The notes under the pieces are model-generated. The model saw nothing but the letters and a program-made list of their open reading frames with translations. It did not search any database and had not been told where the DNA came from. Shown here piece by piece: positions 10,858-58,305 of a stretch of 63,866 nucleotides of DNA. Source of the stretch: Octopus bimaculoides. Taxonomy: Eukaryota. Every line of letters begins with the position of its first letter. The stretch's first letter is position 1. The translations under genes were made by a program, and so were the position numbers. The stretch spans positions 130,006,499 to 130,070,364 of the forward strand of contig NC_068981.1 of assembly GCF_001194135.2 (NCBI RefSeq), given 5' to 3'.

Positions 10858-13800
10858 NNNNNNNNNNTATGTATATATACAAGGTGGTATCAAAAAGTTC
10901 CAGGACTAGTTATGTTTAATAAAAAATAAGTTATTTACCTAAGGTTTAACATCATCTCCTTTGAAATAGTCACCACAGCAATACACTGGTATCAACGTTA
11001 CTGCCTCTTTTAGAATCTGGCCTGGATGTCATTTTCCATAAGTGATATTTGCTCTGGATCTTGGCAACAATATTAAAACACCAACCTTTGAATGACATTT
11101 TCCTCTTGGAGAAGAGATGGCAGTCCATAGGTGCTAAATCTAGTGAATAGGGCAGGTGCAGAAGTGATATCATGTTTTTGGTGAGAAACTCGCAAGTGAA
11201 GAGAGCTCGGTGACAAGGTGCATTATCATCCTGAAGAATTCAATTCTTTGCGCTCCACAGATCTGATCATCTTAGCTGAATATCTTTCCCCAAAAACTTC
11301 AAAATATTGCTGTAGAACTCTTGATTGACTGTCTGACCCTGAGGAACAAATTCTCAATGCACAATACCACTTTTCAGTACTTTACATAGTGTACTGAATG
11401 TTTTTTTGTTTTATTATAGCACTGACATTAATGAGGTCACCAAGTAATTTGCAAGACCCCTCAACTGAGTTGGTACAATATTGAGGGAGATGCCTTTATG
11501 TCAGGTGTTGAGAGATTAAAGTATCATAGAGGGACTAGAACAGGTGTCTTGCTAAAGATGGATAGAGAGAATAGTGAGGGTATACCCTCAAGGTACAAGA
11601 ACATAAGCAAGAGAAAGGGACAGAGGAACAGAAAAGCTGGGTAGGAAGGTTAGTTTGTGAAGGTGTGAAAGGAGGCTGACAGATGGTTAGAGGTGGTGAT
11701 ATAGATGGATGCAGTGAATGCGGTACACAGGTGGAGACATGGTCAATGATGCATATCAATTTGGTGGGGGAATGAAGGAAATTGAGGTGAGTTGGAGAGG
11801 AGAAGGTGATAAATGAAAGTAATAGGAAGACGAGAATTTGAAAGATTGGGAGATAAATGGTATATATGTATACATATATATTTGTGGTGGCTGCAACTCG
11901 ATTTCAAGTAAAGTCACAGTTTCAACATGTGCAACATAGATGTTGTTTTTCATTCCTGTTAGGGACTTACAATCTTTTGTGCATAGATGTAGCAACATTG
12001 AGTGCCCCTTGCTGGAGGTGTCAAAGTTTTATTTTGGTGAACCTTCATATGACATTTCAGTCAACTTCCTGATGCACATTCTTTTGCACACTCTCTGTGA
12101 GTAGAGATGCCATATAATACATAGTTAACAGCTTCCATGTGTCTGTAGCTGTGTGCATGCACAAGTATGTGTCTGTGAGTGTTTACTTTCTGCATCATCA
12201 TCATTTAATGTCTATGCTCCATGCTGGCATGGGCTGGATGGTTTCACAGGAACTTCTGATGGGTCCAAGGACTGCATCATACTCCAGAATTTGCTTTAGC
12301 ATGGTTTCTATAGCTGGATGCCTTTCCTAATGCCAACCGCTTTACAACATGTACTAGTTGCTTTTTTCAGCACTAGTAAGGTCAGCATGCAGCTCACAAA
12401 GCTACAATACCTGGGTGGGGGTGGGGGAATTTATGCACAGAGATGAGGGGTTAACATATGAAAGGAGAAGAGGGAGGGGCAAACAAGTTCTAGTACAGGA
12501 GCTATTGACTCAGCTTTAGGAGAGAGAGAGTGATAATGGGATTGATCAGTTGGAGCTGCAAGTCCAGATGGCTTGTCAAGGTACAAGGTGAGTAGAAGTG
12601 TGTTGGCACAGAGAAGGTAGGTGGGAGTTTGTAAAAGAATATGAGAGAATAATAGATAGGGGGATGGGAGGCTGGTAACTACTGTAAAGATTGGGTAGGA
12701 TTGAAGGGTGAGTGTAGGGTGTGATGGATGACTAATGATTTGGGGAAGGTAGAGAGATGTAGAAGAGAAGACAAGAGAGAGATAACATGTTTATGCAAGC
12801 TACATACAAGGGTGGGGTAAAAAGGCAAGCATAGTGCATGAAAGAAGATTTGGTGGGCCAGTGGTGAAGAGTGAATCATGTGGGTGAGAACAATAATGGA
12901 TGGAGAATAACTGACAAGTGAAATGGTTCTAGATAGCAAGAAAAAGCAAGTAGGGTGGAGGGTTTGCAATGAGAAAAATGATGGGTGAGGAGGTTGGTTG
13001 GAGGGGATTGGATGAGGTGCATGAACAGGCAAGGATCAGTGACAGAAAGAGTATTCAGTTGTAAAACAATGCCTGAATACTACAAGGTGTTGTGCCAACC
13101 CACGGTAGCATGTAAGAACAGACCTAAAACAAATCAACATTGTCTTTCTGTTTCTCTTTCTCTCTCTCTCTCCTATTCCCTGTCAGCTATAGGGATTCAC
13201 TTAAGCCCTTTAGTCTTAGAGGTTGCAAGGTGACTTCACAAGTTGTTGGCACTCCGTCACTTATGATGTCGAGGGTTCCAGTTGATCCGATCAACGGAAC
13301 AGCCTGCTCATGAAATTAACGTGCAAGTGGCTGAGCACTCCACAGACACGTGTACCTTTAATGTAGTTCTCGGGGATATTCAGCGTGACACAGTGTGACA
13401 AGGCTGGCCCTTTGAATTACAGGTACAACAGAAACAGGAAGTAAGAGTGAGAGAAAGTTGTGGTGAAAGAGTACAGCAGGGTTTGCCACCATCCCCTGTC
13501 GGAGCCTCGTGGAGCTTTAGGTGTTTTCGCTCAATAAACACTCAGAACGCCCAGTCTAGGAATCGAAACTGCGATCCTATGACTGCGAGTCCGCTGCCCT
13601 AACCACTGGGCCATTGCGCCTCCACGACTTCACAAGTACTGTGTCATGAAAAGAAGCACCCAAAACTGTAAAGTGACTGGCATTTGGAGGGACATCTGGC
13701 TTTAGAGATGTCAAAAAGTCATAGGGGTATGACACAATTATCATGATGATGGCATGTAGTATCATTGTCATCATGATGGCATGTGGCTTAGTGATTAGGG

Positions 13801-14139: not shown

Positions 14140-14492
14140 ATGGGTGTATATTATTTGACAGGAGTTATATTTAAGGTTACTAATATGCATTTAATCTAAA
14201 CTTACAACCAATCAATCATCTGTTAATGTAGACAGTTTCTGTTTACCGTTGGTTAGGATATTGCTAATGAAATGAAAGAAATAACGTTGCTTAATTATGT
14301 TTGTCTTCTCCCAATCTATTGCAGGACACTCATCTTGGACAACAGATTCTATTGGCTTCTGGCCGAATCCACAAAAATAAAAGCTATTGTGGGCCGACTG
14401 TTTCTCACATGTTGCAAAAGGTAAATTCTTACATATATTTATTCTTTACTGCAGTGGTTCCCAACCTGTGGTCCGCAAACTAAATTCAAAAT

Positions 14493-14524
<32 letters not shown>

Positions 14525-16705
14525 TTAACATCCGCTTTCCATGCTAGCATGGGTTGGACGATTTGACTNNNNNNNNNNTTGAAACATATGTAGGAATAAA
14601 GTATGCAATTATAACATGCATTTTCTCCAATCCTTAAATTCTTAAATATATATGTATATATATATATGTGGATATATGGTAGTAGCCGTTGCAAGATCTG
14701 CATCATGGAGAGAACCAAAATTCTTAAGGACTTTAAGAAGCCTGGCGCATTAAACAGCTGTAAAAATGCGTTTTCTAAATGTATCCACTGCACTACTTAC
14801 TAGAAAATTGGATCTTCCTGTTTGCTCATTAGGCCTCTCAGAGTCTATAAAGGTTCCCTTCTCTGATTAAGGGGAAACAACCCGTATTCATTAACGTTGT
14901 TCCTATTCCTCAAGTTTTAATAGTTTCCTCACATCCGCAAAAGCAGATATTTTAAAATTTTGTATTCCTATAGAGTCTCACGAGCTGTCCAGAAGGCTTT
15001 AAGTTTGTGTGTGTGAAACCTTGGTTAAGAACTCTATATAAAATTTTGTTGTAATAATTTACTGCTCTGATATATATTTTATTAACTACATACACACACA
15101 CATATGCACTTACATATTTACATATATATACACACACATACACCATTCATAATTGTGTATATTATTATTTGCATGAAAGCATTTTCTATTTACTCTTTTG
15201 CAGGCTGTTTAACTTGATAGAATGATTGCACAAGTTGCTCATTGCTATAAGTTTTTCATTGATCAAACGCTAAAGAGACCTCTATATTTAAGTCATTATC
15301 AAAGAACTCTCCTTCTACTCCAACTTCGCCGTTTTAAGCATCTCCAACTTTCCAATCCAGTTTTACCAACATTTTTTCGGGCAAAGAACTATTTGGAAAG
15401 AGTTGCTCTTGTTGACCAGAATGGGCACTTCCGATACAGAGACCTACTCCATTACAGTGCAATTTTATCTAAAAAAATTAAAAATACAGTTGGCTGCACT
15501 CCAAATTCCTGTGAAGGGTTACGGATAGCATTTCTTTGTGAAAATGATTTGTCATATGTCATAACAGAATGAGCAACTTGGATGATTGGAGCAGCTGCTG
15601 TTCCTCTTTGTAAAACATATCCTGTTAAAGAAATTTGTTATTTCATAGACAATTCCAAATCCTCAATTGTTATTATTAGTGAAGAATTCAGAAGTCTAAC
15701 TAAGGAAATAGAACAAAAAACAGGAGTTCAAACATTGCTTTTAAGCAAAGATGACTATCTTCATGACTATGATCCATGTCAAAATTATTGGTTGACTAAA
15801 TGTAAAGAGTTGGACAGAAAATTTGAAGAAATGCTTAAAATAAACCAGTTCAAAAACCAGCCTGCATTAATTATTTATACTAGTGGTACAACAGGGAAAC
15901 CAAAGGTAAGTTTTTAATTCCACCCAATTAATTTTAATGTTTTATTTACTACCTCTCCCTTTCTCTCTCCTATATATATGACCGTTGACTGAACACTATT
16001 CATTTTTTTTCTCCGTGTTTTTCTCCTTGTCTCCGTATTCTTTCTGTTGAAGAGCGTAGCTCGAAACGTCAAAGACTTTCCGTATTCCCGAGCGTCATAC
16101 TAATATATACTTTTGTTATTTACACCACCTGTCCTCGTCTGNNNNNNNNNNNNNNNNNNNNNNNNNNNNNNNNNNNNNNNNNNNNNNNNNNNNNNNNNNN
16201 NNNNNNNNNNNNNNNNNNNNNNNNNNNNNNNNNNNNNNNNNNNNNNNNNNNNNNNNNNNNNNNNNNNNNNNNNNNNNNNNNNNNNNNNNNNNNNNNNNNN
16301 NNNNNNNNNNNNNNNNNNNNNNNNNNNNNNNNNNNNNNNNNNNNNNNNNNNNNNNNNNNNNNNNNNNNNNNNNNNNNNNNNNNNNNNNNNNNNNNNNNNN
16401 NNNNNNNNNNNNNNNNNNNNNNNNNNNNNNNNNNNNNNNNNNNNNNNNNNNNNNNNNNNNNNNNNNNNNNNNNNNNNNNNNNNNNNNNNNNNNNNNNNNN
16501 NNNNNNNNNNNNNNNNNNNNNNNNNNNNNNNNNNNNNNNNNNNNNNNNNNNNNNNNNNNNNNNNNNNNNNNNNNNNNNNNNNNNNNNNNNNNNNNNNNNN
16601 NNNNNNNNNNNNNNNNNNNNNNNNNNNNNNNNNNNNNNNNNNNNNNNNNNNNNNNNNNNNNNNNNCCATGCTAGCATGGAAAGCGGACGTTAAACGATGA
16701 TGATG

Positions 16706-16759
<54 letters not shown>

Positions 16760-19700
16760 GGATAAGCATATTAAAGGGGGTCCATAGGAAAACTCATTTA
16801 AATAAAAGAAGTCCTTGGTAGTGAAAAGGTTGGGAACCACTCCTTTAGTGCAATACGCCACTTCTATATCAGGGGTCAGCAACAAGGTAATCATAGCCCA
16901 CAAATGGGCCATTAAAGTGATCTATATGGGTTTCAGATCTTTTGTTTCAAATTTATTGTATTTATAAATCATTGAGTAGTTTCAAGTAACCTTTTTTGTC
17001 ACAATTTGTTTAATTTTTGCTAAAATAACCATTGCAAATAATGGAAATAGCGATGCACCTGAGGATGATTTTATTCATATATAATCATTTTCATTTAACT
17101 TCTACTTTTCCATGCTTGCATGGGTTGGACAGTGTTTATTTTCTATGGCTGGGTACACTTCTTGTTGCCAACAAAGGCAAGGTAGTATTCAGGGCCAGCC
17201 TTAAGCCAATTGGACTGATTGCTCCCAATCGGGCCCCGTGCTCAAGGCTAGACATGTTCTTGCAGAATATTGGAAATGAATCACACTGCTTGTTTGACAG
17301 TGACAGTCAGTTTACAACTGTCACATGATGTAAAGACAAGGAGACACAAGTACACACGTGTGCACACAAACACTTTCACTTCCTGTCTACCTAATCCATT
17401 CACAAGGCTTTGGTTGGCTTGGGCTATAGAAGACACTTGTGTAATGTGTTGTGTATTGAGACTTAACCTAGGACCATGTGGTTGGGAAGCAAGCTTCTTA
17501 CCACACAGCTACGCTTGCACCTACAAAACAAGGATCAGTTCTTTTTGCAATGGTCCTCTTTTGATTTTTAAAAAATTTACTCATGGTACAAAGCCAGCAA
17601 TTTGGGAGAAGGGGAAAATCACTTAAATCAATCCCAGTGTTCCACTGGTACTTATTTTATTGACCCTAAAAGGATGGAAGGTATAATCAACCTCAGTGAA
17701 ATTTGAACTCAGAACATAAAGATGGATGGAATGCTGCTAAGCATTTTGTCTAGCATGATAGCAATTCTGCTAGCTTGCCTTTATATATATGTATGTATTG
17801 CAAAAAGAAGTTGTTCATCCTTGTTTTGTGTGACAACAGTTGTTTTGATTTCAATGTTTGTATGTGTAAGAGTATGTATTTTTTCAGATAGAGATTCTTT
17901 AGCTATCCCAAACTTGGTCTTCATCAATAATATATCATTTCCATTCATGTCACTTCATCAATTTGAAATTTGTTTTATTTAACAAATAATGAAGATGGAG
18001 ACCTTCCTGCAATGCCAAAAGAGAGAGTTGAATAACCTTTATATATTACAGGCATAAATGCCCATCATCAAACATGAACAGTTTTAAGGAATTTAAATTT
18101 ACATAGATCATTTCTTTAACCCTTTAGCATTCAGACTATTCTTTCAAATGCAATGCTTATATATTCACATTGTTTTGAAGTAATTGTGCATTATCTCATA
18201 ACTTTGAGACTTCAGTGATGTAATTGTTTATTTTTAGAATGACAATGTAGAGTAGGTGTGAAAGGTTGGAACTGGCCAGTTTGAACAAAAAAGAATGATA
18301 CAATATCTGGGCTGGATATGGTCAGTTTGAATGCTAAAGGGTTAAACTGTTCACTTCTGTTGATAGGCATTTGTGCCCAAAATATATAAAGGGTGCTTAA
18401 CTGTGCCTTTTTGTACTATTAAAATCTTTTTATCTTCTTTATTTGTTATTTTACTTCTGTATCACAATACTTGAAGCAAACTACAACACTCTTTTTTGTT
18501 TTATTTCAGAGAGAAGTTGGCATGGGTGATAAGCAATGTTTTTCAAATGGAGACCAGTGTGCAATAGGTACCCTGTAAGTACCTATTCTATATGGTTATG
18601 TGTCGATCTTGACATTTTTCTTTCTTTTTTGCTTTTTTTCTTTTTTACTGATTTTAGTCAATTGATTGTAGCTATGTTGAGTTGGCATCTTTACAAGTTT
18701 TTACTCAATTATATCGATTCCAGTACTTAATCTGGTGCTTATTTCATCATCCTCATTAGCTACAGAAATGCAAAATGGACAATCAGTCAAACTCTGTTTG
18801 AATGTTTTGTTCGTCACGCATACATATGTACAGAAGGGAGGAAACCATTACAGCTCATTGTAATACATCATCATTTTAATGTTCATTTTGCCATGCTTGC
18901 ATGAGTTGGATGAAATTTAATGAGGTGGATTTTCTGTGGCCAGATGCCCTTCCTGTCACCAACCCTCACCTGTTTCCTGGTAAGATAATATTTCTCCATG
19001 ACCAGACATGCTTTCAAAGATAGTAAATGAAGGACACTGCTTGCAATAATCACTTGAAGTCAAGTCAAAGAGACACGTATACGACAAGTTTCTTTCAGTT
19101 TCTTTCTAACAAATCCGCTCACAAGACTTTGGTTGGCCTTGGGCTATCATAGAAGGCACTTCCCAAGGTGCCATGTAGTGGGACTGAACCTGAAATCATG
19201 TGGTTAGGAAGCAAGTTTCTTACCACACAGTCACACCTGTGTCTATTATGTACAGTATATGAAATAAGATTAGATAGAAAAACCTGGTTGCCAGCTCTAC
19301 AATTTTATATAGAATTACAAGGAAAATGAGAAGAATGACTGAGAAAACATTACTAATATTAAAATACAAACCAAAAAATCAACACACAGATAAATCACTC
19401 ATAAAATACATAAGAAAAATCCACCAGTATAATTCTTAAATTTGCTATTTCTGATTTATCAGTTATAACAATAAAGGATTCCTGTGATCTTTTGTAACCT
19501 AATCCAAAGCATGCAGATAACATCCCATTATTACCATCATTTCATTCTGTTGATGGGACTGTGAAGTTTATGAAAGGTTATTACACCAATGGATTAAGGA
19601 ATTTTGCATTTACACTAGTGCCATGTCAAAAGCTCTCATGCTGGTACTGCATAATAGCACTTATGCCAGTACCATGTAATAGCACAAAAGGATCACAAAA

Positions 19701-22700
19701 CAGATTCTTCAAGCTGAGCCAACTAGCAGGATGCCTAAGAGTAAACCAAAAATAAGATGGTTGGATATCTTTAGTCTCAGTTGGTTACACTTGGATATCC
19801 AAATGGAAAGTGCAATGATGACTGCTTCTGATAGGAGAAAGTGCCTCAAGACTCTACCCACGTCCACAACCCTCACAAGAATAGTGGACGGAGGAGATGG
19901 CTGGATGGCTGGAAACTAAACTTAAACATTGTTATGTCATTGATATAATCATATTTCAAAGAAAAGCTGTTCTCTATTCACACACATAAATATTTGTATA
20001 TAAATATAATTTTATGCTTCAAATTGATGTTTTTTTCGTCTTTAGATACATCCCAAATATGATGTCAACAGTTGCTTACTGCAAGGACAAAGCGTTCTGT
20101 GGAATTTATTCCAAAGAAGGTGACAGCTTCTTAGCTGCAGGTCGAGGTAGGTACACATATTCTTTTATTCATTGAATGTTTTATTCACTTTTCCTCTCTC
20201 ACTCACTCTCTCTCCTCCTAAACCTCCCTCCTTCCATCTCTCTCTCTCTCTGTTTTCAGCACGAGTGTATTAATCTCTTTATGACTTGACTTCACATGGT
20301 TGTTGTAAATGAGTGTCACCATCATACACGTGGTGTCTTTAGTTTCCAATCTTCCATGCAAACATGTCTTGCCATAAAGATATATTAAGATATATTACAT
20401 TGCTTGGAAACAGGTGAGGATTGTCAATAGGAAAGGTATCTGACCATATAAATCTGCTTTAATGAATTCCATTTGATTCATGCAGGCAGGGAAAAGTGGA
20501 CATTAAAATATTAAAATGATGATGATAGTATGCATATATATATGTATATGAGCGTGACTGTTGCCAGTACCGCCAGACTGGCCCTCGTGCTGGTGGCACG
20601 TAAAAGCACCAACTACACTCTCGGAGTGGTTGGCGTTAGGAAGGGCATCCAGCTGTAGAAACTCTGCCAGATCAGATTGGAGCCTGGTGCAGCCATCTGG
20701 TTCGCCAGTCCTCAGTCAAATCGTCCAACCCATGCTAGCATGGAAAGCAGACGTTAAACGGTGATGATGATGATGATGATATATATATATATATATATAT
20801 ATAGTTCAAAAAAACAATAACAAAAAAACAAAAAAACAACAAAGTGAGGACGTGATATGGATAGTATTATTGGACGCTCAGGAAAGGAAAGNNNNNNNNN
20901 NNNNNNNNNNNNNNNNNNNNNNNNNNNNNNNNNNNNNNNNNNNNNNNNNNNNNNNNNNNNNNNNNNNNNNNNNNNNNNNNNNNNNNNNNNNNNNNNNNNN
21001 NNNNNNNNNNNNNNNNNNNNNNNNNNNNNNNNNNNNNNNNNNNNNNNNNNNNNNNNNNNNNNNNNNNNNNNNNNNNNNNNNNNNNNNNNNNNNNNNNNNN
21101 NNNNNNNNNNNNNNNNNNNNNNNNNNNNNNNNNNNNNNNNNNNNNNNNNNNNNNNNNNNNNNNNNNNNNNNNNNNNNNNNNNNNNNNNNNNNNNNNNNNN
21201 NNNNNNNNNNNNNNNNNNNNNNNNNNNNNNNNNNNNNNNNNNNNNNNNNNNNNNNNNNNNNNNNNNNNNNNNNNNNNNNNNNNNNNNNNNNNNNNNNNNN
21301 NNNNNNNNNNNNNNNNNNNNNNNNNNNNNNNNNNNNNNNNNNNNNNNNNNNNNNNNNNNNNNNNNNNNNNNNNNNNNNNNNNNNNNNNNNNNNNNNNNNN
21401 NNNNNNNNNNNNNNNNNNNNNNNNNNNNNNNNNNNNNNNNNNNNNNNNNNNNNNNNNNNNNNNNNNNNNNNNNNNNNNNNNNNNNNNNNNNNNNNNNNNN
21501 NNNNNNNNNNNNNNNNNNNNNNNNNNNNNNNNNNNNNNNNNNNNNNNNNNNNNNNNNNNNNNNNNNNNNNNNNNNNNNNNNNNNNNNNNNNNNNNNNNNN
21601 NNNNNNNNNNNNNNNNNNNNNNNNNNNNNNNNNNNNNNNNNNNNNNNNNNNNNNNNNNNNNNNNNNNNNNNNNNNNNNNNNNNNNNNNNNNNNNNNNNNN
21701 NNNNNNNNNNNNNNNNNNNNNNNNNNNNNNNNNNNNNNNNNNNNNNNNNNNNNNNNNNNNNNNNNNNNNNNNNNNNNNNNNNNNNNNNNNNNNNNNNNNN
21801 NNNNNNNNNNNNNNNNNNNNNNNNNNNNNNNNNNNNATGTGTGTGTTTATGTGTGTGCGTGCGTATGTGTGCCAGGTATGTGTGTTATTTTGTGTGTGCA
21901 CTCCTGTGTGTATGTGTGTGCATGTGTATGCGGCTGTGTATGTAGGCGTGCGCGTATATATGGGTGTGTGTGTGTGTGTGTATATGTGCGTTCGGCTATG
22001 TGTGTGTGAGGGTAAAAAAATAAAAATAAAAAAATAAAGAAAAGTGTTGCAGGGACGTAAAGTGGAGAGTCATAAGGAAGAGAGGGCTGCGTTGAGTCCA
22101 AAGGGGAAAGAAGAATTAAGGTTGAAAATGTAGCGTTGCTCCAAGTGGAGTCGCGAGGCAGTGGACCCATGGTGCAGGGCAAAAGATAGAGATGTATACA
22201 TATGAAAGGCTTCCATACAGTTTCTATGTACCAAATTTCTCTGTTTTGAATTTCATCACTGTTAAGCTGTTGTGGAAGACACTTACTTAAGGTATCTTAC
22301 AGTGCAATATGATGTTGATCCATGTGATTGCAAACAACATGTTCATATTTATGCCCATGTATAAAATTCTCAGTGACTATCTGAAGTATCTTAATATCAA
22401 TATTCAGGATTGAATTAATTTTTATGGTTTATTTTAGCAGCTCTTTATCGAGCTTTGTGTTTACTTCAGAAAATTTTTATTAGTCTTTTAAAATCATTTG
22501 GAATCTTCCATTAAAAATTTAAGCTTTACTAAAAGCTTGATTATAAATTATTTCTCAAGCCTCTGACAGTTTGTTTATTTATCTTCAGATGTATATATAC
22601 GGTTGTATGACACATCATGTGATGAATTCAGACATATTAAATCAATTCGAGCACAAGGATTTTTCTGGAGTATTTTAGATGCTGCATTTAGGTAAGTTTT

Positions 22701-25700
22701 TATTTCTTGAAAATTTTCTTGCTATTAAGGAAATATAGTGAAGAAAACGAGCTTCTAATGATGTGAAAAGGGAAAGTTGAGAAACCTTTGTATATTTCAG
22801 GAACAAAGGTCCATTGTCAGAAGTGAATAGACAAAATGGAGTTTCTGCCTGTTTTGCTATCAAAATGACAGGATCTACATAAACTCACATTTCTAAACTG
22901 TTCGCTTCTGATGAGGGGCCTTTGTGACAAAACACATAAAGGTTACTCAAGTTTCCCTTTTTGCATTGTTAGAAATCCTCTTTCTTCATTATTTGTTATT
23001 TTACTTCTGTATCACAATGTCTTAAGCAAACTACCATGCTTTTCTTTAACTCTTTAGCATTCAGATTACTCTGTCAAATATGATGCCTGTCTATTCATGT
23101 TGTTTTGAATTTATCCTGCATTATCTTGTAGTTTTGAGATTTTGATTACGTGATTATTTATTTTAAGATTAACATTGTAGGGTAGGTGTGAGAGGCTGGA
23201 TCTGGCCAGTTTGAACTTAAGACAGGTAAAATATTTTGGCTGGTTATGGCCAGTTTAAATGCTAAAGGGTTAAGGAAAAATAATTCTTAAATCTGTGATT
23301 GTCAGTTATTAATATACTAATTATTAAATGTGAAAACAACATTCTGTAGTTTCTAGATAACATGTTCTTGATAGCTGATGCCATTCTATTTATCTTGTTG
23401 AATCAATTTTAGACTTTCTTCACAACTTTAAAATAATTTTTATGGACTGGTTTATGGAGGACGGATCTTGTAGTAATTTAGAACTTGACATATTTTGTTT
23501 GTTTGTAAATTAAATGCAGCGGCATGCATACATAGGCTTCTTATAGCTTCTCTTTACTAAATCCACTCACAAGGCTTCAGTTGGTCCTGGACTATAATAG
23601 AAGACACATGCTCAAGATTCCATACAGTAGGACTGAACCCAAGATCATATGTCTATTGATAAGAAGTTTTAAAAAAACTGTTTTGCATGTTTTATTCGCT
23701 TGTTACTTACTTTCCCCCATTCTGAAATAATCCATGCCTCACTGGTTGAGTGTGTGTCCTGCCTTGAGAAATACTGATCCAGCAGAAGACCTGTATGAAT
23801 TTATTGATTGTAAACTAGCTTTAATTTGCTAACTTATTCATCATATTCATTCTACTCTTTCTGTTACTCCCAGTTGATGCTTATCTAACCAACTTCTTAT
23901 CACACACTTACTCAGAACTGCATTATTTTCAATCCCTTCTACTATTTCTCCATTTATTAACTTGAAAGAGCAGTACACATTAATCTGCCTTTGTTAACCC
24001 TAACTTTCAGTCCAGGAAGGCTTGAAAAATCTACAAAAAGACTAACTAATAATAATAAAATTGTGAATGCTTGTATAGTATGTAATGTAACAGTATTTGG
24101 GGCTTAGAATATACAGTATTATATTTTGAATGTATTTGGTACCCAGAGTGTTGTGGTATGTCTGCAGACAATTCATGGTCTTTGAAATAACATACTCATT
24201 GATGTAATAGATTCCTCTTGTACAGCAGAGTTTATTCTAAAGAACACTTATAGAGTCCTGGTTTAAAGACTAATGCTGAAGCTCAGATATTTCATAAAAA
24301 TACATAAAACCAAAGACACAATTCTGAAGTCATCAACAAATGGTCTTATGTTTAAGTTGCTTTAAAGGAAATGATTGTAAAAAAATCTATAAAACAAAAT
24401 ATTTTTTCCCAACAGGTTCCATATAAAAAAGAATTAGTTACTAAGAGAGATTTCCAAGCAATCATTTTATAAATATACCTGGTAAATATTGAAAGAACAT
24501 TAAATTTTATGTAATATTCCATGATTTGCTTATAGTAACTGTAAAAGGAACAGTTCCTTTTTCTGAAGGAAATTATTTATCATTATAAATACTTAATGTT
24601 TTCAAAGCTTTCAATGACTTATGATAAAACAACATCAACATATACTTTTGTATTTTAATTGCTTGTATTTTTATAAATGTATAATTTGGAAGAATTTAAC
24701 TTAAATCTTTTATAATATTTCTTTTATATTTTCTTAATTTTTGTTTAGTCCTGATGGAAATTATGTGATATATTCCAGTTGGTCTGATTGCAGTAAGTCT
24801 TACATCTTTTATTATTCAAGAACCGTCAAAGCAGTGAAAAAGATAGAATTGTTAGCATGCCAGGTGAAATGTTTAGCGACATTTCATCCGTCTTTATGTT
24901 CTGTGTTCAAATTCTGCTGGGGTCAACTTTGTCTTTCATCCTTTTGGGGTTGATGAAATAAGTACCAGTGGAGCACTGGGGTCGATGTAATCAACAAGCC
25001 TCCTTCCCCTAAACTTTAGGCCTTGTGCCTATTGTAGAAAGGATTATTCAAGAGCCGTCTAATTCTATTCTGAAAAAATGGAAATCGATTACATACTAGC
25101 AATAATGATGATAGTAATTTCTTGCACAAACTGTTTCTTCATTAATGAACAAATGTGAAAGATTATATCATCTATAGTGTCAGCCTACCATTCTTTACTT
25201 CTCTATCTCTCAGAACATTGATAAAATATTTCATAATTTTTACATACTCTTATCATAACAATGACTTTTGTAAGTGTGAATATTTGCATATGAATTATAG
25301 TATTGTTTGATCATCATCATCATCGTTTAAAGACCGCCTTCCATGCTGGCATGGGTGGGATGGTTTGACAAGAGTTGGCCAAGCAGAAACCTTCATTTAA
25401 CTGTTTTGGCAGGAGTGTTACAGCTGGATACCCTTCCTAACACCAACCACTCAGCAGGGTGGACTTAGTGGGGTCTTTTATGTGGCACAAGCACAGACGA
25501 GGTCAGTTTTAGTGAGGTTTTTACAGTTAGATGCCCTTCCAAATGCCAAGAACTTTACAGTGTGGACTGGGTGTTTTAAGTGGCTCCTGCACTGACAGGG
25601 TCACCAAAAACTTGCAAGACAAAAAGAAAAAAACTCTTTTGAGAGGGGAGGTGGCATTAGAGGAGGTAATCTTGTGTTGGATGATGAAAGGTTATATTGA

Positions 25701-28700: not shown

Positions 28701-31700
28701 TGATTTGTTGCCAAGAACATTTCTCACTGAAGCATGTAGTTTATTATACTGATGTCATCATTTGTCCCTTTGCTAGTATGAATACAATTTGCATTCAAAC
28801 TCACTGAAACTATTTTTAAGGTGTCAGATTTAAAGAAGCCTTTATCTTACATATATTTCTATTATTTTTCTACCATTTTAACTTAATACTTTGCCATTTT
28901 TAAAAGTAAGCTTTCACTATTTTCCAGTGCAAACTGTGGTAATTTTTATGTCTATGATTTAGAGAGAAATCAGAAGATATTAACAGTAAGTCATTTTGCA
29001 AGACTTTACTTCTTCTCTTCCAGTCACTGAGTACAAATGAAAAAGAATCATATGTGCGTGTGTGCATGTGCTTGTGTGTTTGTGTGTGTGTGTGTGTATG
29101 TGTGAAGGTCTGTATATACCTATCTACCCATTTCCCATGGACAAACAAAAGAAAGAAGCACACAACACATTTGGAAGGAGTGCATATATTAGTAGTCAAT
29201 AACAATTTGATTTGACTCCATGCAACTTTAAGTATTGTAGGCTCATCACAGAACCTAGCACCTTAGGCCTCAGGAGCTAGTTTCATGTGATGAACCTACA
29301 AAAGTTACATGGAGCCAATTCAAACTATTATTAAATACTAATATATATATGCGCGCACACACACATACACACACACATGTGATGGGCTTCTTTCATTTAG
29401 TATCTACCAAATCCACTCACAATTATTTGGTTGGCCTGGCACTATAGTAGAAGACGCTTGCACAAGGTGCCACACAGTGGGGCTGAACCTGAAATCATTT
29501 GCTTCTTAACAACACAGCCATGCCTTCTTAACCATATAGCCATAACTGCACCCATTTATATTATATATCAGGCTGAGTAAAAAGTAATCAACGTTTTGAA
29601 ACATGAAATTCATCACAATATATTTCAACCATGCAGAAATTTTATTCATCAAAGTGAGCACCATTACAATCAACACATTTTTGCCAATGAGTTACAAGTT
29701 TGTTTATTCCAGTAACATAAAAATCTGGAGTTCTAGAGCTGATGAACTCTTTGAACACACTTTCAGCATCAATTTGATTTTTGAACTCCTTCTCTCGCAG
29801 GAAACCATCAAGGTGCTTGAAAAGGTGGTAGTCATTACGAGAAAGATCTGGGGAATAAGCTGGGTGGTGAAGAACTTCGTGGCCAAGTTCCCTCAACTTC
29901 TGGAGTGTCATTAGGGAAACGTGTGGTTGAGCATTGTCATAAAGAATGATTGGCCCTCTTCTGTTGACCAGTCTGGGATGGAGGAGTAGCAGTTTTTTGT
30001 TCATTTTGGCAATTTCACAGCAATATGTTTCTGCAGTAATGGTTTTTCTGGGTTTTAAGAAGTTATTGTGGATGAGTCCAGCAGTACACCACCAAACAGT
30101 TACCATAACCTTTTTGAAGAGCTCAGGTTTAGGGAAGGATTTTGGTGTTTCATTTTGATCCAGCCACTATGGAGAGCATTTTTATTATTATACAGAATCC
30201 ACTTTTCATTGCAAGCTGCAATACGGTCGAGAAATGGATCAGTCTGATTATGGAGAAGAAGCAATGAGCACATCCCATATCTGTGCATCTTCTGATTTTC
30301 TTTCAAATTGTGTGGTACCCATTTGTCATGCTTTTTTGATTTTCTGATCGCATGCAAATGGTTGCAGGTACTTTTCTGGCTAACTTGAAGTTCTTTTGCC
30401 TGTTCTTGGGTGGTTTTACGTGGATCTTTCTCAATGACAGTCTTTAATTGATCATCATTGATGACGATCTTTAAGGCTCAGTTCTCCACTACAAAATCGT
30501 TTAAGCCATTTTTGAGCTGACCACTCACTGGTCATTTCCTCACCAAATGTTTCACTGATATTGCGAGCAGTTTCAGCTGCTTTACATCCTTTTTTGAAGT
30601 TGAATAGCAAAATTGCTCAGATATCTTACTTTGACAGTTCCATTTTAGGTGATTGTAACAACAGTGGAAAAAATATCAGTGTTAATTTATTGATGCATCT
30701 GTATTAGACAATTGCAAAAAGTTGTTTAAAAAAATTTCAAACCTCTACAAAAATCCGGTACAAATTCTTCATGGTTCAAAATGTTGCTTGCTTTTTACTC
30801 AACCTCATCATCATTATCATTGTTTAACGTCCGCTTTCCATGCTGGCATGGGTTGGGCGGTTTGACTGAGAGCTAGCAAGCCAGAAGGCTGCACAGGGTT
30901 CCAATCCGATATGGCAATGTTTCTACAGTTAGATGCCCTTTCTAACGCCAACCACTCTGAGAGTGTAGTGGGTGCTTTTTACATGCCACTGGCACGAGGG
31001 TTAGTTAGGTGGTACTGGCATCAGCCATGCTTGATGGTGCTTTTTACATACCACTGGCTCGGGAGCCGGTCAGGCGGCACTGGCAGTGATCATTCTTGAA
31101 TGATGCTTTCTACATGCCACTGGCACAGGACCAGTCAGGTGGCACTGGTACCGACCACGCTCAAATGATGCTTTTTACATGCCACCGGCACAGGTGCCAA
31201 TCAGGCGGTACTGTCATCAGCCACAACAACGACTTCACTTGCCTCAAAAGGTTTTCACAAATGCAATTTATTGCCCAATGATTGAAGGATACTCTTAAAT
31301 GGGCTGGTTATGCTGCACTGGCATACGCCACGTTTACGGTCTCACTTGGCTTGCCAGGTCTTCTCAAGCACAGCATACCTCCAAAGGTCTCAGTCACTTG
31401 TCTTCACCTTGGTGAGGCCCAACGTTTAGAAGTTGTGCTTCACCATCTCATTCCAGGTCTTCCTGGGTCTACCTCTTCCACATGTTCCCTCTACTGCTAG
31501 GGTGTGACACTTTTGCACACAGCTGTCCTTATCCATACGCAGCACATGACCACCAGCACAGTTGTCTCTCTTGTACACCACATCTGATGCTTCTTATGTC
31601 CAATTTTTCTCTCAGGGCGCTTATACTCTGTTGTGTATGCACACTGACATTACACATCCAGCAGAGCATACTAGCTTCATTCCTTGCAAGCTTATGCATG

Positions 31701-33567
31701 TCCTCAGCAGTCACAGCCCATGTTTCACTGTCATATAGAATGACTGTTTGCACATGCATCATACAGTCTACCTATTATTTTGAGCGAGAGGTCCTTTGTC
31801 ACCAGCAGAGGTAGGAGCTCTCTCAACTTTGCCCAGGCTATTCTTATTTTAGCAGTTACACTCTCAGAGCAACCACCCCGCTACTGATTTAGTCACTTGT
31901 AGTTTTTGGCCCAAGGAATGTGATGGAAGCTGTTTTCTGCACATTTTCAGTGTTTATTGCCCCTGAGCATTTACCACACACAAAAACTATCTTCCCAGTT
32001 AGCCTTCCTATTATGTGTCCATAGCTTACACCATCTTATGGAGTTTCTACCTACACCTTTACTACAGATCGAGCAGGGCCATCTGCCTGAAGGGGTTTGT
32101 GTCTTGTCTACCTTCCTACTTATTAGGACTTTGGTTTTAGCTAGGTTGACTCTAAGGCCCTTCGATTCTAGTCCTTGCTTCCACACCTGAAACTTCTCCT
32201 CTAGTTCTNNNNNNNNNNGGGCATCCCGTCTTGAATTCCTGTGTTATTGCTTGGAGGACTATGATAAATAGGAGGGGGCTGAGGACTGAACCTTGGTGGA
32301 CCCCTACCTTTACCGGAATTCTTCACTGTACTCGTTGCCAACCTTCACCTTACTGACAGCATCTCTGTACATAGCTTGCACAGCTCTCACTAACCATTCA
32401 TCTATCCCTAGTTTCCTCATTGACCACCAGATAAGGGATCATGAGATCCTGTCAAAGGCTTTCTCCATGTCAACGAAAGCCAGGAACAGAGGTTTATCTT
32501 TGGCTAGGTATTTCTCTTGCAGCTGTCTTACCAGAAATATAGCATCAGTGGTGTTTTTCCCTGGAACAAACCCAAACTGCATCTCGTCTAGATTAACTCC
32601 CTCCCTAATTAGTTGGACTATGACCCTCCATGATTTTCATTACCTGATCCAAAAACTTGATACCTCTGTAATTATTTGTATCCAATGCATCACCTTTACT
32701 TTTGTAGCAGTTGACTATGGTGCTGCTGGACCAGTCATTGGGTATGACTCCTTCGTGTATCACCTGATTGACTATACAGGTAACTAGACTATAGCTGACA
32801 CCACCAGATATTTTAAGCATCTCTGTGGTTATTCCTGATGGGCCGGAGGCTTTCCCTGTCTTCATATCCTTAATTGCTTTATCTACCAAGGTATTGTTAA
32901 TTTGGACAGTTGGTCCCTCCGTTGGGTCGACATTTGGCAGACCCTCTTTCTCCCATTCATTCTCTTCATTTAGCAACCTTTCACAGCGGTGTCTCCAAGT
33001 CTCTCTCCTTGCAGCCTTGTTAAATGCAAGTGAGCTATCATCCATGTGGACACATTTCAAGTCTTTGGTCCTCATAATGCAGAACATTGGCAATTTTTTT
33101 ATCTCCTTCCTCTTTGGCTAAGTAAACCTGTCTCCTAGCTTCCCTTCTGGCAATCTGATACAATTCCCTGCTACCATCGTTCTTCCTGTTCTTCCATGCT
33201 TGTTTCTTTTCCCTAATGGCCCTGACAACTACATTGTTCTACCACCACATTACCATGGGTCAAGAGTGGACTTTGCACCATCCACAGATCTGGTTAGTAG
33301 CCTTCAACAGGCTGTGCAGAGGGACTGAACCCAAGAGCACATGGTGGGGAACCAAGCTTCTCAACCATACAGTCATGTCACCACCTATATATATNNNNNN
33401 NNNNNNNNNNNNNNNNNNNNNNNNNNNNNNNNNNNNNNNNNNNNNNNNNNNNNNNNNNNNNNNNNNNNNNNNNNNNNNNNNNNNNNNNNNNNNNNNNNNN
33501 NNNNNNNNNNTATATATATAGTTTTAGGGAAAATTTTGGATTTTGTCCCTAATATTATTATTATTAT

Positions 33568-33599
<32 letters not shown>

Positions 33600-35867
33600 T
33601 ATTCTTTTGTTGGTTTCAGCCACTGAAACCATGACCTTGCTAGAGCACTGCCTTCAAGGGGTTCAGGGGATTATATTCATTGGTGTGCTTCACCCAGTAC
33701 TTGATGACATGACTGTATGGTTGAGAAGTCCCTCTGCACAGCACATTCCGCAAGTGTCTTCTACTATAGCCCTGGGCCATCCAAAGCTTTGTGAGTGGAT
33801 TTGGTAGACAGAAACTGAAAAGAGCCTCTCATATAAACCAATGGTTTACAACCAGGTTCTATATGACCCCTGGGGGTTCACAGTATTATTTTAAGGGTTC
33901 ATTACAAGAGTCTGCTAGGTTTCTTTCTCTAACATTTTAAATAGTGCAACCTACATAAGTGAATGTGTGATGAACAAATTAGGAATTTTGAAAGAAGTAT
34001 CTATAAAACTCAAATGGCTATGGGGGTCCACCAGTATAAAATAGTAATCAAAGGGGTCCATAGATGAACAATGGTTGAGAACCACTGTTGTAAACGAACA
34101 TCATTATTGTTTGTTTCCATTCTTCTGTGAAAAAGATGAGAAAATATTACCTTGCTTGGAAACGGTTGAAGGTTGGCAACAAGAAGGGTGTCCAGCTGTA
34201 GAAAATCTGCCTCAACAAATTTCGCCTGATCCATGCAAACACGGAAAAGCGAACATTAAAACAATGATTATGGTTATGATTGTGTGTGTGTGTGTGTGTG
34301 TGGTATTGTGACCCATTATACAATATTTTTTTAAAATTTCATTTTGAATTTCTCTGGTCCAGTAAACTCAGCAATAATGATTGACTAATATATTGTGCTA
34401 CTGTGAATGAAGTAAGAATGTGCATAAAGTATGTATTATTGGATGCATTGATCAGAGGTATTCCAGCCATGACCATCTTGTCTTTTCCCTATGAGCAAAG
34501 AACGCAAGACCCATATAATGCAGTATGTCCCTTTCTAAGATAGTGGTATGTTATCTGTGGGACATTTAGCTACTACTTCTTGCCGCTAGAGCGTCCATGT
34601 AGAGACTTCCTTGGCTCCTGTGGACATGTTTGTGTTATACTTGCGTAAAGCTAAAGTCTGAAGGAGAGGTAGAAGGAGGGGGGGTTATAAAAGGGAGATC
34701 ACTCTCTAAAGGGACGTGACTCTATTGAACTTGTTAAAATTAGTATTATATTAACGTATGGGAGTCACTATAATTGACTGCCATCTCCTCTATATTTCTG
34801 ACCTTGTGTCTATGTAAGAAATTATTATTATTTTATTATCGTGCGGGTGACACGTAAAAGCACCCACTACACTCTCTGAGTGGTTGGCGTTAGGAAGGGC
34901 ATCCAGCTGTAGAAACTCTGCCAAATCAGACTGGAGCCTGGTGTTGCCATCCGGTTTCACCAGTCCTCAGTCAAATCGTCCAACCCATGCTAGCATGGAA
35001 AGCGGACGTTAAACGATGATGATGATGATGATCCACTGCCCTTTTGGCAAATAAACCATTGGTCAAGTCATTGAAAGAGATCACTCCACAATCTTCCTTT
35101 AGTTAAGATAGTCAAGCAGTGTTCCCTGTTCTGGGGCTTTGGTGAAGGAGGTTCTGTGGTGGATACACATGAAAGGACTGAAGATGGACTCCTTCCTCTT
35201 GACATTTTCATGAACTTTTTCAAGATCAATAAAATAACTAACTGCTTATTGCTAAGGCCTATTAAATCAACTATACAGTTGAATCTAAAAAGGGAAGGAC
35301 ACATCAGACAATGTAATTCTAGAGAAGACAAGATTGATGTAGATATGACCTCTTTGATCCTAGCTCTGCTGAGTCAGGGCTGCCCTGAAGTTACACTACA
35401 GCAACAACTACAACTACTTCAAATTGTTGGAGTTGTGCCAATGTTAGAAACCATTGTTGTTGTCAATGTACTTTTTTGTGATTTATAGATCAAAGCACAT
35501 GGTGATGATGTTAATGCAGTAAAATTTGCAGATGATAGTTCCCAGATATTGTTCACAGGAGGAGATGATGGATTCTGTAAGGTAAGAAATAAAATAAATA
35601 CATTTAGATTTGTTTATGTTGTGCAGTATATTACTTCTCTAACGTATTGCTACTTCACTGTTCCACATTCTACACTAATGCTCTATATTGTATATTGAAT
35701 AATCTCATTGTAATGTACTATTTTGTTTTATTATATTTTTCTCAATGATCTGGTCTTCTGTTCAATCCCACTGCACAACACCTTGGGCAAGTGTTTTCTA
35801 ATATAGCCCTGAGCCAACCAAAGCCTTGCAAGTGAATTTGGTAAATGGAAACTGAAAGAAACCTATT

Positions 35868-50490: not shown

Positions 50491-50903
50491 TCAAACACCA
50501 ACTTCTTGCTTAAAATGAGAAGGAGTCTGATTATGATTGGTCAAGTTCCCTAATTTGAACTGAGACTCAACTTGCATACTGGAAGGTGTCAGTGAAGTAT
50601 CATGAGGATCCGTGAGTGTTTGATGAGGATGCTGGTCGTGTATATTAACTGTGATTGAACAGTCATTAGACAGAGGACTACTGCAGGTCAGAGGTGACTG
50701 GCTAAAAGGGGAAGTGTCAAGTGAATTGCTGCTGCCAACTGTGTCTTGAAGAATTATTTGGGAATCACCATTCTGACCATTAATAATGTTCTCCACAGCT
50801 TGATTTCCAAGCTGGTCAGGAAAACTGGGATTTGATAATAAATGAGGTTGAAGACTAACTGCTGAAACCGCTGCTGAGGAATGTCCAATTTCACTATTTG
50901 CTC
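50491..50903 (-). CDS. HNF4: HNF4 terminal exon (F domain, Ser/Gln/His-rich, ends FKQEVGV*)
   Basis: tttccag acceptor, open to TGA at 50491-50493. The KQEV terminus resembles vertebrate HNF4A (TKQEVI). Confidence 0.9.
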
Positions 50904-56900: not shown

Positions 56901-58265
56901 GTACTCAACTGTCTTCTCAAGTCTCTACAGTTCCCATGTCTTAACAGTTTGCTAAGTATTCTACCCCAATCAATATTGACATCAGACCACTTTTCTCTGC
57001 AATCCCCATTCCCCTTGTTTCACCTCTCAAATCCTGCAATAAATACTTTACCCATCTGACAGGAGGTCCCACTGCTAATCTGTGATAATTCAAAGTTAAT
57101 TCATTTTAACTACCCTAACCATGCCTAGTTATTCCTATGTTTCAATGTAAGAAACCCAGAAGTTATAGACACTGCTCTTGCTCCTTAGATTAATGAATAA
57201 TAATAATAATTTTTAAAATCTCCAGCTACTTAATTTTACACTGACAGCCTGTCTATTGTTTCAAATAATACTCACTTCTCTTGACATTAACTCAGCATTT
57301 AAAAGTGAAGAAATTGATAAAGATGAGCTGGTGCCCAGATCTTCATAACTTGTTCGCCGAATGCTGATGCGATCTCTTTCATTCTGTACCGCTTCAAGAG
57401 ACAAGAAATTATGCAAAACTAGAGATATGCAATAAATTTAGATCATGTTTAAAACCAAACATTTAAAAAAAATTCTATGACAGGCAGAATAAATTAGGAG
57501 ACAAGTAATTATTGAAAATGTTCTATTTAAAAAAACAAATAAAAAGACAATCATTATCTTACAGATAATCTGACAAACATGGGATTAAACATACTTGATT
57601 TACACATATTGAGAATACTAGATATTGGCAAAACTATTAAGATACCAACTTATTAACCACACAATCAAGGTGGCTTATGATATTTGTTATGATTCTCTAC
57701 ATTCTGAATTCAAAATCATACCATGGCTGACCTTGCCAGAGTCAATGAATAAAAAACCAACGAAATACAGAGGTTGATCCTCTCAGTCTCTCTCTCTCTC
57801 TGTATATATAAGTTATAATAAGGAAGTCAAACCAAATGATATTTTTGAAAGTGTTTAATATGAATGTTTCAGGTCATCGTGCAATATAGAAAAGGAAATA
57901 TATCCTTACACAAGACCTTCCTCAGTTAATACATTTCAAAATCAGTCTCTCTCTCTCTCATATGTATATATAAATTGGCTATGTGAGGTGGGTACAAAAG
58001 GAGTATGAGGATAGGATACAGCAAAAAAGAACCAAAAGGTTCATAGTTTGTATACTATTACTACTGCTACTACTATTACACTGTGTCTCTAAGGCATTTA
58101 ACTCTCAACAGCGCAGGCACTGTTTAAGTGTTGAATGTGTCATTAGCATATGGTGCTGAGCTCAAATTCTTTATATAATATAGAGAAAACAAAAATAAAA
58201 TAAATAAAATGATGCCACTCTAACCTTCATTGAACTAATATCTGAAAATAAATGCTTCATTAATG

Positions 58266-58305
<40 letters not shown>

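What the first reader, a model, noticed from the sequence alone, without database searches (positions are those of the whole stretch)
14452..16842. Pack-hAT-like element carrying a host enzyme exon (ACSF3-like) inside a DCAF11 intron
Seen: 16-bp TIRs (15/16 match) and an 8-bp TSD (CTTTACTG/CTTTAGTG, 7/8) start 31 nt after the DCAF11 exon-4 donor. They enclose a 702-nt acyl-CoA synthetase exon that keeps its own acceptor, donor and flanking intron, so it is a DNA-level copy and not a retrocopy. A related cargo-free MITE of about 250 bp is at 33839-34087. Known: 8-bp TSDs and CAGTGGTT termini typify hAT/Charlie elements, and TIR-mediated capture of gene fragments is well known in plants (Pack-MULEs) and less documented in animals. 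Inference: this is a gene-fragment-carrying transposon, or a MITE that later received the fragment. Caveat: the cargo contig 14579-16141 has gaps on both sides.
Basis: partly seen in the sequence, partly recalled or inferred. Interest (0 to 1): 0.82.

Follow-up and report, generated by a model that had tools for sequence, protein, structure and literature searches.

The report
Broken MITE holding an ACSF3 exon copy
A small hAT-type transposon remnant in an octopus DCAF11 intron is real. The acyl-CoA synthetase exon placed inside it carries a stop codon, is joined only through two assembly gaps next to common SINE repeats, and shows no sign of having been captured or moved by the transposon.

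Summary
The sequence facts are confirmed. There is a 16-bp TIR pair (15/16), 8-bp flanks matching 7/8, and a 702-nt first coding exon of an ACSF3-like malonyl-CoA synthetase with its own acceptor, donor and intron flanks. A related 249-bp MITE lies at 33839-34087.

- The exon has an in-frame TGA (15570-15572) at an invariant Trp.
- The sequence at the outer edge of each gap is a copy of a very abundant SINE-like repeat. The two copies lie head-to-head, with their (CAT)n tails against the MITE remnants.
- So no MITE sequence is read in continuity with the exon contig.

No other ACSF3 exon is in the window, so it is not a nested gene. The exon differs from a related octopus with dN/dS 0.39 and shows no rate acceleration. 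It is therefore either a very recent dead duplicate or the parental exon itself.

My best reading (about 0.45) is an older hAT-like MITE later split by young SINEs and a recent, non-functional ACSF3 fragment. The fragment would be a nested secondary insertion, not cargo mobilised by hAT. A mis-scaffolded contig (about 0.3) and a true Pack-hAT (about 0.12) remain open. No same-species sequence could be reached, so contiguity is untested. Interest is modest.

The parts
14325..14420 (+). Putative DCAF11 5' coding exon (96 nt, phase 0 at both ends), 23 nt upstream of the left flank duplication
   Evidence: It has a cag| acceptor and an AAG|gtaaat donor with an open frame. There is no homology hit of its own. 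Proven DCAF11 exons lie downstream on the same strand.
14444..14451 (.). Left 8-bp target-site duplication, CTTTACTG
   Evidence: It matches 16843-16850 at 7/8.
14452..14493 (+). Left remnant of the hAT-like MITE. The TIR is CAGTGGTTCCCAACCT (14452-14467).
   Evidence: (I10).
14494..14568 (-). SINE-like repeat copy with its (CAT)n tail at 14494-14523 and 3' body after that. Its head points right, into the gap.
   Evidence: It is 94-97% identical to copies at 20714-20780 and 34969-35032.
14569..14578 (.). Assembly gap of 10 N
   Evidence: Two of the three other 10-N gaps (10858, 61406) sit inside repeats that continue across them; the third (32209) was read but not assessed.
14579..16141 (+). 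The 'cargo' contig: 625 nt of upstream intron, the ACSF3 exon and 236 nt of downstream intron. Apart from microsatellites it is unique in the window.
15204..15905 (+). First coding exon of an ACSF3-like malonyl-CoA synthetase. ATG is at 15222 and the exon ends in the YTSGTTGKPK motif.
15570..15572 (+). In-frame TGA replacing an invariant Trp codon (TGG in the related octopus)
16142..16665 (.). Assembly gap of 524 N
16666..16707 (+). Second SINE-like copy (3' end plus (ATG)n tail), inverted relative to the left copy. Its head points left, into the gap.
   Evidence: I1: 42 nt, 95%. One search shows 100% identity to 34985-35026.
16708..16759 (.). (AC)n microsatellite
16760..16842 (+). Right remnant of the MITE. 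The TIR is at 16827-16842.
16843..16850 (.). Right 8-bp target-site duplication, CTTTAGTG
33839..34087 (.). Related 249-bp MITE without an insert. Its flanks are ATATAAAC and TTGTAAAC (6/8).

Best explanation
A non-autonomous hAT-like MITE inserted into the 5' part of DCAF11 and made an 8-bp duplication. Its interior was later disrupted. Two copies of the abundant octopus SINE now sit head-to-head, each with its microsatellite tail against a MITE remnant. Between their heads lies about 2.1 kb that includes a copy of ACSF3's first coding exon with intron flanks. That copy cannot encode protein, because it is a lone exon and carries TGG>TGA. It diverged from the functional gene only very recently.

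The fragment is therefore most likely a young secondary insertion nested in an older MITE. It could be a break-repair patch or a SINE-associated duplication. It is not likely to be cargo that hAT transposase captured and carried here.

Shown: the TIRs and TSD, the SINE copies and their orientation, the exon's identity, the stop codon, the absence of other ACSF3 exons, and the substitution pattern.

Inferred: that the contig really lies between the MITE ends, that a functional parent gene exists elsewhere, the order of events, and the repair mechanism.
For: - The TIRs and TSD are far beyond chance.
- Only 42 and 83 bp of MITE remain. Each MITE remnant runs into a SINE copy before its gap.
- The stop sits at a Trp that is invariant in 10 homologues and is TGG in five contigs of a related octopus. 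That is unlikely in a functional gene and expected in a dead copy.
- Two of the three other 10-N gaps sit inside repeats that carry on across them, so such joins look local. Contig B starts TTGAAAC, close to where the SINE subfamily would read TGAAACC after contig A stops. This hint is weak.
- The exon shows no excess change on the window lineage (10 vs 15 polarised substitutions; dN/dS 0.39), so the copy is young. The TSD already has a mismatch, which suggests the MITE is older than the fragment.
- There is no further TIR inside the contig.
Against: - Contiguity across both gaps is unverified.
- Both flanking contigs end in a high-copy repeat, which is the situation in which scaffolders misplace small contigs.
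- No parent ACSF3 locus could be inspected, so 'duplicate' is inferred from the stop codon alone.
- The stop could be a heterozygous allele or an error, or it could be corrected by RNA editing.
- The age argument rests on one TSD mismatch.
- Two SINE insertions in one small MITE would be unusual if they were independent. At about one SINE per 3 kb I estimate roughly 0.3%.
Confidence: 0.45

Rival explanations
1. Scaffolding artefact. Contig 14579-16141 belongs elsewhere, either at the true ACSF3 locus or at another duplicate. It was dropped into a gap of about 2 kb between two SINE-ended contigs. The MITE would then contain only SINEs and unassembled repeat.
For: - The contig is bounded by N runs on both sides.
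- Both neighbouring contig ends are a repeat with at least 17 copies in 64 kb.
- The exon looks like a gene under selection: dN/dS 0.39 and no acceleration.
- No other ACSF3 exon is in 48 kb downstream, whereas another cephalopod has exons 2-4 within 10.6 kb. An orphan exon 1 is what a misplaced contig would look like.
Against: - The in-frame TGA is improbable for the functional exon.
- Contigs of 1-4 kb are the norm in this scaffold, and DCAF11 exons appear in the right order, so local scaffolding is generally sound.
- Two of the three other 10-N gaps look like true short gaps.
Confidence: 0.3
2. A true Pack-hAT. The ACSF3 fragment was acquired between hAT termini at another locus, and the unit transposed into DCAF11 with its cargo. 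The SINEs were part of the captured DNA or inserted later.
For: - TIRs plus an 8-bp TSD enclose the fragment.
- A cargo-free relative lies nearby.
- Pack-hAT elements are documented in maize and rice (PMC8903248).
- The element encodes no transposase.
Against: - No continuous MITE-to-cargo junction exists.
- Each MITE remnant runs into a SINE before its gap.
- The contig contains no inner TIRs, which the tandem-insertion capture model of PMC8903248 would predict.
- The cargo appears younger than the insertion, given the TSD mismatch and the lack of neutral decay in the exon.
- No second copy has been seen.
Confidence: 0.12
3. One-step retrotransposition or repair patch. A break inside the MITE was sealed by SINE cDNAs primed from both broken ends, which leaves the tails outward. 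Reverse-transcriptase template switching onto unspliced ACSF3 pre-mRNA supplied the filler. This is a specific mechanism for the best explanation, not a separate structure.
For: - The tails-outward, heads-inward geometry.
- The exon and the right-hand SINE are in the same sense orientation.
- All of contig B lies in transcribed ACSF3 sequence: intron, exon, intron.
- Two independent SINE hits in one MITE would be rare.
Against: There is no direct evidence. The junctions lie in the gaps, and no TSD or target deletion can be scored. Two-tailed insertions are rare in the systems where they have been studied (my own knowledge).
Confidence: 0.15
4. The contig is the functional ACSF3 exon 1, and its genomic UGA is recoded to UGG (Trp) by A-to-I RNA editing, which is very active in coleoids.
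For: - The TGA lies in a perfect 13-nt inverted repeat (15231-15243 / 15568-15580) that is present in both the MFE and the centroid fold (I18).
- 8 of 10 window-lineage changes are sense-strand G>A.
- There is no rate acceleration.
Against: - The fold as a whole is no more stable than shuffles (z = -0.13).
- A 13-bp helix is short for ADAR.
- A mitochondrial housekeeping enzyme would need near-complete editing in all tissues.
- The A/T excess continues into the intron flanks, by my reading of the alignment. That fits plain GC>AT drift.
Confidence: 0.04
5. A complete ACSF3 gene nested in the DCAF11 intron.
For: The exon is in the same orientation as DCAF11 and carries its own splice sites.
Against: tblastn with 74 homologues and with exons 2-4 of another cephalopod finds nothing else in the window. 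Only gaps of 524 N or smaller could hide an exon.
Confidence: 0.02

Closest known systems
hAT-superfamily MITEs (non-autonomous elements with 8-bp TSDs)
   Same: It has an 8-bp flanking duplication, a short 16-bp TIR starting CAGTG, no coding capacity, and a related 249-bp copy in the same window.
   Different: No autonomous partner or family consensus is available. The TSD lacks the A at position 7 of the Ac-family nTnnnnAn consensus. The interior is replaced or interrupted by SINEs.
Pack-TYPE transposons (Pack-MULE, Pack-CACTA, Pack-hAT of plants; PMC8903248)
   Same: TIRs and a TSD bracket a fragment of a host gene that keeps its intron sequence.
   Different: The cargo is not joined to the termini by read sequence. 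Each MITE remnant runs into a SINE before its gap. There is no evidence of mobilisation or of extra copies. The host is an animal, where transduplication is rarely reported (Turmoil-1 of C. elegans, PMC2572040).
Nested transposon insertions and duplicated gene-fragment pseudogenes in introns
   Same: An older element is split by younger SINEs. A lone exon carries a disabling stop and has no partner exons.
   Different: The head-to-head, tails-outward SINE pair flanking the fragment is not the usual pattern for independent nested insertions.
Misplaced small contigs in short-read scaffolds
   Same: A 1.56-kb contig sits between N runs whose outer edges are high-copy repeats, and it carries an exon of an unrelated gene.
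   Different: The exon has a nonsense codon, and two of the three other 10-N gaps in this scaffold behave as true short gaps.

Membership tests
hAT superfamily (non-autonomous / MITE) | 8-bp target-site duplication | tested here: met
   CTTTACTG and CTTTAGTG match at 7/8 directly outside the TIRs. The second copy has 6/8. The definition is taken from PMC8961557.
hAT superfamily (non-autonomous / MITE) | Short TIRs of 10-25 bp | tested here: met
   16 bp at 15/16. The start CAGTG fits the YARNG pattern, which I recall from memory.
hAT superfamily (non-autonomous / MITE) | TSD consensus nTnnnnAn (Ac family) | tested here: inconclusive
   T at position 2 is present, but A at position 7 is absent in this copy. 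Both are present in the copy at 33839-34087.
hAT superfamily (non-autonomous / MITE) | An autonomous element with matching TIRs and a hAT transposase in the genome | not testable with these tools
   There is no hAT transposase ORF in the window, and no access to the rest of the genome.
Pack-TYPE transposon | Host gene fragment physically continuous with both transposon ends | tested here: inconclusive
   N runs at 14569-14578 and 16142-16665 separate them. The outer edges of the gaps are SINE copies.
Pack-TYPE transposon | An intact parent gene elsewhere in the genome | not testable with these tools
   No same-species sequence is in the collections. A multi-exon ACSF3 exists in another cephalopod.
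Pack-TYPE transposon | Evidence of mobilisation: further copies with different TSDs, or an empty site | not testable with these tools
   The search for orthologous intron contigs found nothing.
ACSF3 / malonyl-CoA synthetase (AMP-binding enzymes) | N-terminal AMP-binding domain with the YTSGTTGKPK motif | tested here: met
   Pfam PF00501 scores 8e-23. Named relatives are ACSF3 / malonyl-CoA synthetase.
ACSF3 / malonyl-CoA synthetase (AMP-binding enzymes) | Complete, open coding sequence | tested here: not met
   Only one exon is present, with a TGA at codon 117.
Processed retrocopy | Introns absent, poly(A) tail present | tested here: not met
   The acceptor, donor and flanking intron are conserved with the related octopus. 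Copying from unspliced RNA is not excluded.
SINE (the repeat at the gap edges) | Short, very abundant, with a 3' simple-repeat tail | tested here: met
   It has at least 17 copies in 64 kb, a shared body of about 200 nt, and a (CAT)n/(ATG)n tail. Rfam finds no tRNA or 5S head at gathering score, and promoter boxes were not tested.

The most novel reading that the evidence does not exclude
The unit 14452-16842 is a genuine Pack-hAT. It would be a cephalopod hAT-type non-autonomous transposon that acquired the 5' exon of ACSF3 and carried it into a DCAF11 intron, which would show host-exon transduplication by a cut-and-paste element in a mollusc.
Probability: 0.12. Interest if true: 0.6.

Novelty: new member of a known kind. 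Interest (0 to 1): 0.3.

Why it matters
If the contig really lies inside the TIRs, this is an animal example of a host exon sitting within a DNA-transposon shell. Such cases are rarely reported outside plants. The exon has working splice signals, lies on the sense strand of DCAF11, and would read GCT GTT TAA if spliced in, so it could act as a poison exon.

If the contig is misplaced, ACSF3 lacks its first coding exon at its true locus in this assembly, and both gene models need correction. In either case the locus shows how SINE-edged gaps can produce apparent gene capture. It is a cheap target for a PCR or long-read check.

Tried and rejected
- Nested complete gene: rejected. No further ACSF3 exons were found.
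- Same-species or orthologous sequence:
  - Exact look-ups of both halves of the exon ORF found nothing.
  - The cluster of the closest homologue holds only alleles of a related octopus on contigs of 0.9 kb that stop at microsatellites.
  - Searches with the exon-4/empty-site ORF, and with all ORFs flanking the MITE and the exon, found nothing.
  - So the empty-site and parent-locus tests were not possible.
- Synteny in another cephalopod contig (L003): no DCAF11 or HNF4 exons lie within 10 kb of ACSF3 exon 1. This is uninformative.
- The idea that the 'SINE' is really the long TIR of a foldback element carrying the exon: rejected. Another facing pair (5338/6532) is just two diverged copies with nothing shared beyond the SINE body.
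- Long-standing pseudogene: not supported. dN/dS is 0.39, and the window lineage has 10 polarised changes against 15.
- Rfam scan of 14-36 kb: no hits.
- Literature search for the TIR string: only primers turned up. The run accessions of the related octopus could not be tied to a species.
Full report
**1. What is in the sequence**

The region was read directly.
- CAGTGGTTCCCAACCT at 14452-14467 recurs as a reverse complement at 16827-16842 with one mismatch.
- Allowing 3 mismatches there are only 4 matches in the window, against 0.41 expected from shuffles. None of 100 shuffles reached 4.
- Directly outside the two arms lie CTTTACTG (14444-14451) and CTTTAGTG (16843-16850), a 7/8 match.
- At fixed positions this combination is very unlikely by chance. 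My estimate is about 6e-5 for the arm within 5 kb and about 4e-4 for the flank.

A short TIR plus an 8-bp duplication is the hallmark of hAT elements (definition in PMC8961557). The CAGTG start fits the YARNG pattern, which I recall from memory.

A 249-bp element at 33839-34087 has similar termini (CAATGGTTTACAACC ... GGTTGAGAACCACTG) and 6/8 flanks. Its right end aligns over about 66 bp with 16760-16842, with a score of 49 against 24.6 +/- 3.9 in shuffles and 0 of 300 reaching it. The MITE and its relative are therefore real.

**2. The host gene**

Exons on the + strand match human DCAF11 (PDB 9ptu_A) at 7e-65 and 9e-22. They lie at 20089-20142, 22591-22689, 24738-24791, 37953-38051, 39150-39239, 41127-41261 and 42291-42401.

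The 96-nt exon at 14325-14420 has good splice signals and an open frame. It finds no homologue on its own. 'DCAF11 intron' is therefore very likely right, but 'exon 4' is unverified.

An HNF4-like receptor gene occupies the minus strand from about 50 to 59.4 kb.

**3. The exon**

The segment 15204-15905 (702 nt) runs from a ttttgcag|G acceptor to an AAG|gtaagt donor, with ATG at 15222. Its translation is the N-terminal half of an AMP-binding enzyme ending in YTSGTTGKPK (Pfam 8e-23). Named relatives are ACSF3 / malonyl-CoA synthetases. It is the first coding exon.

- All ten aligned homologues have Trp there.
- Five contigs from a related octopus (91% protein identity, two alleles) have TGG.
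- The acceptor, the 18-nt 5' leader and about 80 nt of intron on each side are conserved with that species. It is therefore not a processed retrocopy.

**4. It is not a nested gene**

tblastn with 74 homologues hits only this exon. In a more distant cephalopod contig (L003), ACSF3 exons 2-4 follow exon 1 within 10.6 kb. Their peptides find nothing in the window.

**5. The gaps**

The window has eight N runs. The exon lies on a 1563-bp contig (14579-16141) with 10 N on its left and 524 N on its right.

The outer edge of each gap is the same very abundant repeat.
- The left copy is (CAT)n-TTTAACATCCGCTTTCCATGCTAGCATGGGTTGGACGATTTGACT, at 14494-14568.
- The right copy is the reverse complement of the same sequence, at 16666-16707 (I1: 42 nt at 95%).
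- The repeat has at least 17 copies in 64 kb, a shared body of about 200 nt and a (CAT)n/(ATG)n tail, so it is SINE-like. SINEs make up about 12% of an octopus genome (PMC13282606).
- The two copies are inverted. Their tails lie against the MITE remnants and their heads point into the gaps.

Only 42 bp (left) and 83 bp (right) of MITE sequence remain. No MITE base is read in continuity with the exon contig. Apart from microsatellites the contig is unique in the window, and it contains no further TIR.

**6. Is the contig really there?**

I could not reach any same-species or orthologous sequence for this intron. The evidence is therefore indirect.

For misplacement:
- Both neighbouring contig ends are high-copy repeats.
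- An orphan exon 1 of an unrelated gene is what a stray contig would look like.
- The exon looks selected. dN/dS is 0.39 and dS is 0.11 against the related octopus.
- With L003 as outgroup, the window lineage has 10 changes and the other lineage 15, so there is no acceleration.

For true placement:
- The TGA is improbable in the functional exon. My estimate is well under 1% for an error or a heterozygous null allele.
- The TGA is quite likely in a copy that is free to decay. I estimate about 13-24% after 0.5-1% neutral divergence.
- Contigs of this size are normal here, and the DCAF11 exons are in order.
- Two of the three other 10-N gaps sit inside a (TA)n run and a tandem repeat whose register carries on across the gap, so such joins look local.
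- Contig B begins TTGAAAC. The closest SINE subfamily reads GACT-GAGGACTGG-TGAAACC after the point where contig A stops. This is a weak hint of continuity.

A recent duplicate would also tend to collapse with its parent in a short-read assembly. That would give a contig ending at the duplication boundaries, as seen here. I put true placement at roughly 60% and misplacement at about 30%.

**7. Mechanism**

If the fragment is there, was it carried by the transposon?
- The fragment shows almost no neutral decay, whereas the TSD already has a mismatch. This hints that the MITE is older than the fragment. The evidence is weak because it rests on one site.
- Each MITE remnant runs into a SINE before its gap.
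- The tandem-insertion and re-mobilisation route proposed for Pack-TYPE elements (PMC8903248) predicts inner termini, and none are seen.
- Two independent SINE hits in one small MITE would be rare. At about one SINE per 3 kb I estimate roughly 0.3%.

The tails-outward, heads-inward geometry is what a single break-repair event would leave. SINE cDNAs would be primed from both broken ends and joined over filler. The filler could be DNA, or cDNA of unspliced ACSF3 pre-mRNA. The exon and the right-hand SINE are in the same sense, and all of contig B is transcribed sequence. This mechanism is inference.

I therefore favour 'an older MITE that later received young SINEs and a dead ACSF3 fragment' over a true Pack-hAT (about 0.12).

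**8. Comparison and novelty**

Pack-hAT elements are documented in plants (PMC8903248). Transduplication in animals is rarely reported (PMC2572040).

This locus meets the outer definition, which is TIRs and a TSD around a host fragment. The defining tests could not be run: continuous junctions, a parent locus, and mobilisation. As it stands it is an ordinary nested-repeat locus in a gapped draft assembly, with a modest chance of being something rarer.

Noticed in passing
window 15231-15243 and 15568-15580: The premature TGA lies inside a perfect 13-nt inverted repeat (CAAGTTGCTCATT / AATGAGCAACTTG). The repeat forms a helix in both the MFE and the centroid fold of the exon RNA. In the related octopus only 8-9 of the 13 positions pair. 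The overall fold is no more stable than shuffles (z = -0.13). In a coleoid this raises the small possibility of UGA>UGG recoding by A-to-I editing.
   Followed up: partly
window 15222-15905: With another cephalopod as outgroup, 8 of the 10 substitutions assigned to the window lineage are G>A on the sense strand, including the nonsense change. The 15 changes on the related octopus lineage are of mixed type. The A/T excess appears to continue into the intron flanks, so it may be plain GC>AT drift.
   Followed up: partly
window 15204-15212 relative to 14420: The ACSF3 exon is on the DCAF11 sense strand, has its own acceptor and donor, and is 702 nt long (a multiple of 3). Spliced after the phase-0 exon that ends at 14420, it would read GCT GTT TAA. 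It is therefore a potential poison exon for DCAF11.
   Followed up: no
window about 50000-59400, minus strand: There is an HNF4-like nuclear receptor gene. Its zinc-finger DNA-binding exon is in 58956-59381 ([28 protein letters not shown]...). Ligand-binding-domain exons lie near 56284-56514 and 55010-55300.
   Followed up: no
window 10973-11239, 29645-30477, 54015-54404 (all minus), 32608-33117 (minus), 63441-63866 (plus): There are mariner-type transposase fragments, a reverse-transcriptase ORF and a gag-like ORF at the window end. A mariner fragment also lies just upstream of ACSF3 exon 1 in the other cephalopod contig (L003 9057-9353).
   Followed up: no
window 10858, 14569, 32209, 61406: There are four gaps of exactly 10 N. 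Those at 10858 and 61406 interrupt a (TA)n run and a tandem repeat that continue in about the right register, so 10 N seems to mark short unclosed gaps within repeats.
   Followed up: partly
window 15990-16141: Homology with the related octopus stops about 85 nt after the exon's donor. The last 150 nt or so of the contig (…GTTGAAGAGCGTAGCTCGAAACGTCAAAG…) has no counterpart there or elsewhere in the window. It may be a species-specific insertion or the breakpoint of the duplicated segment.
   Followed up: no
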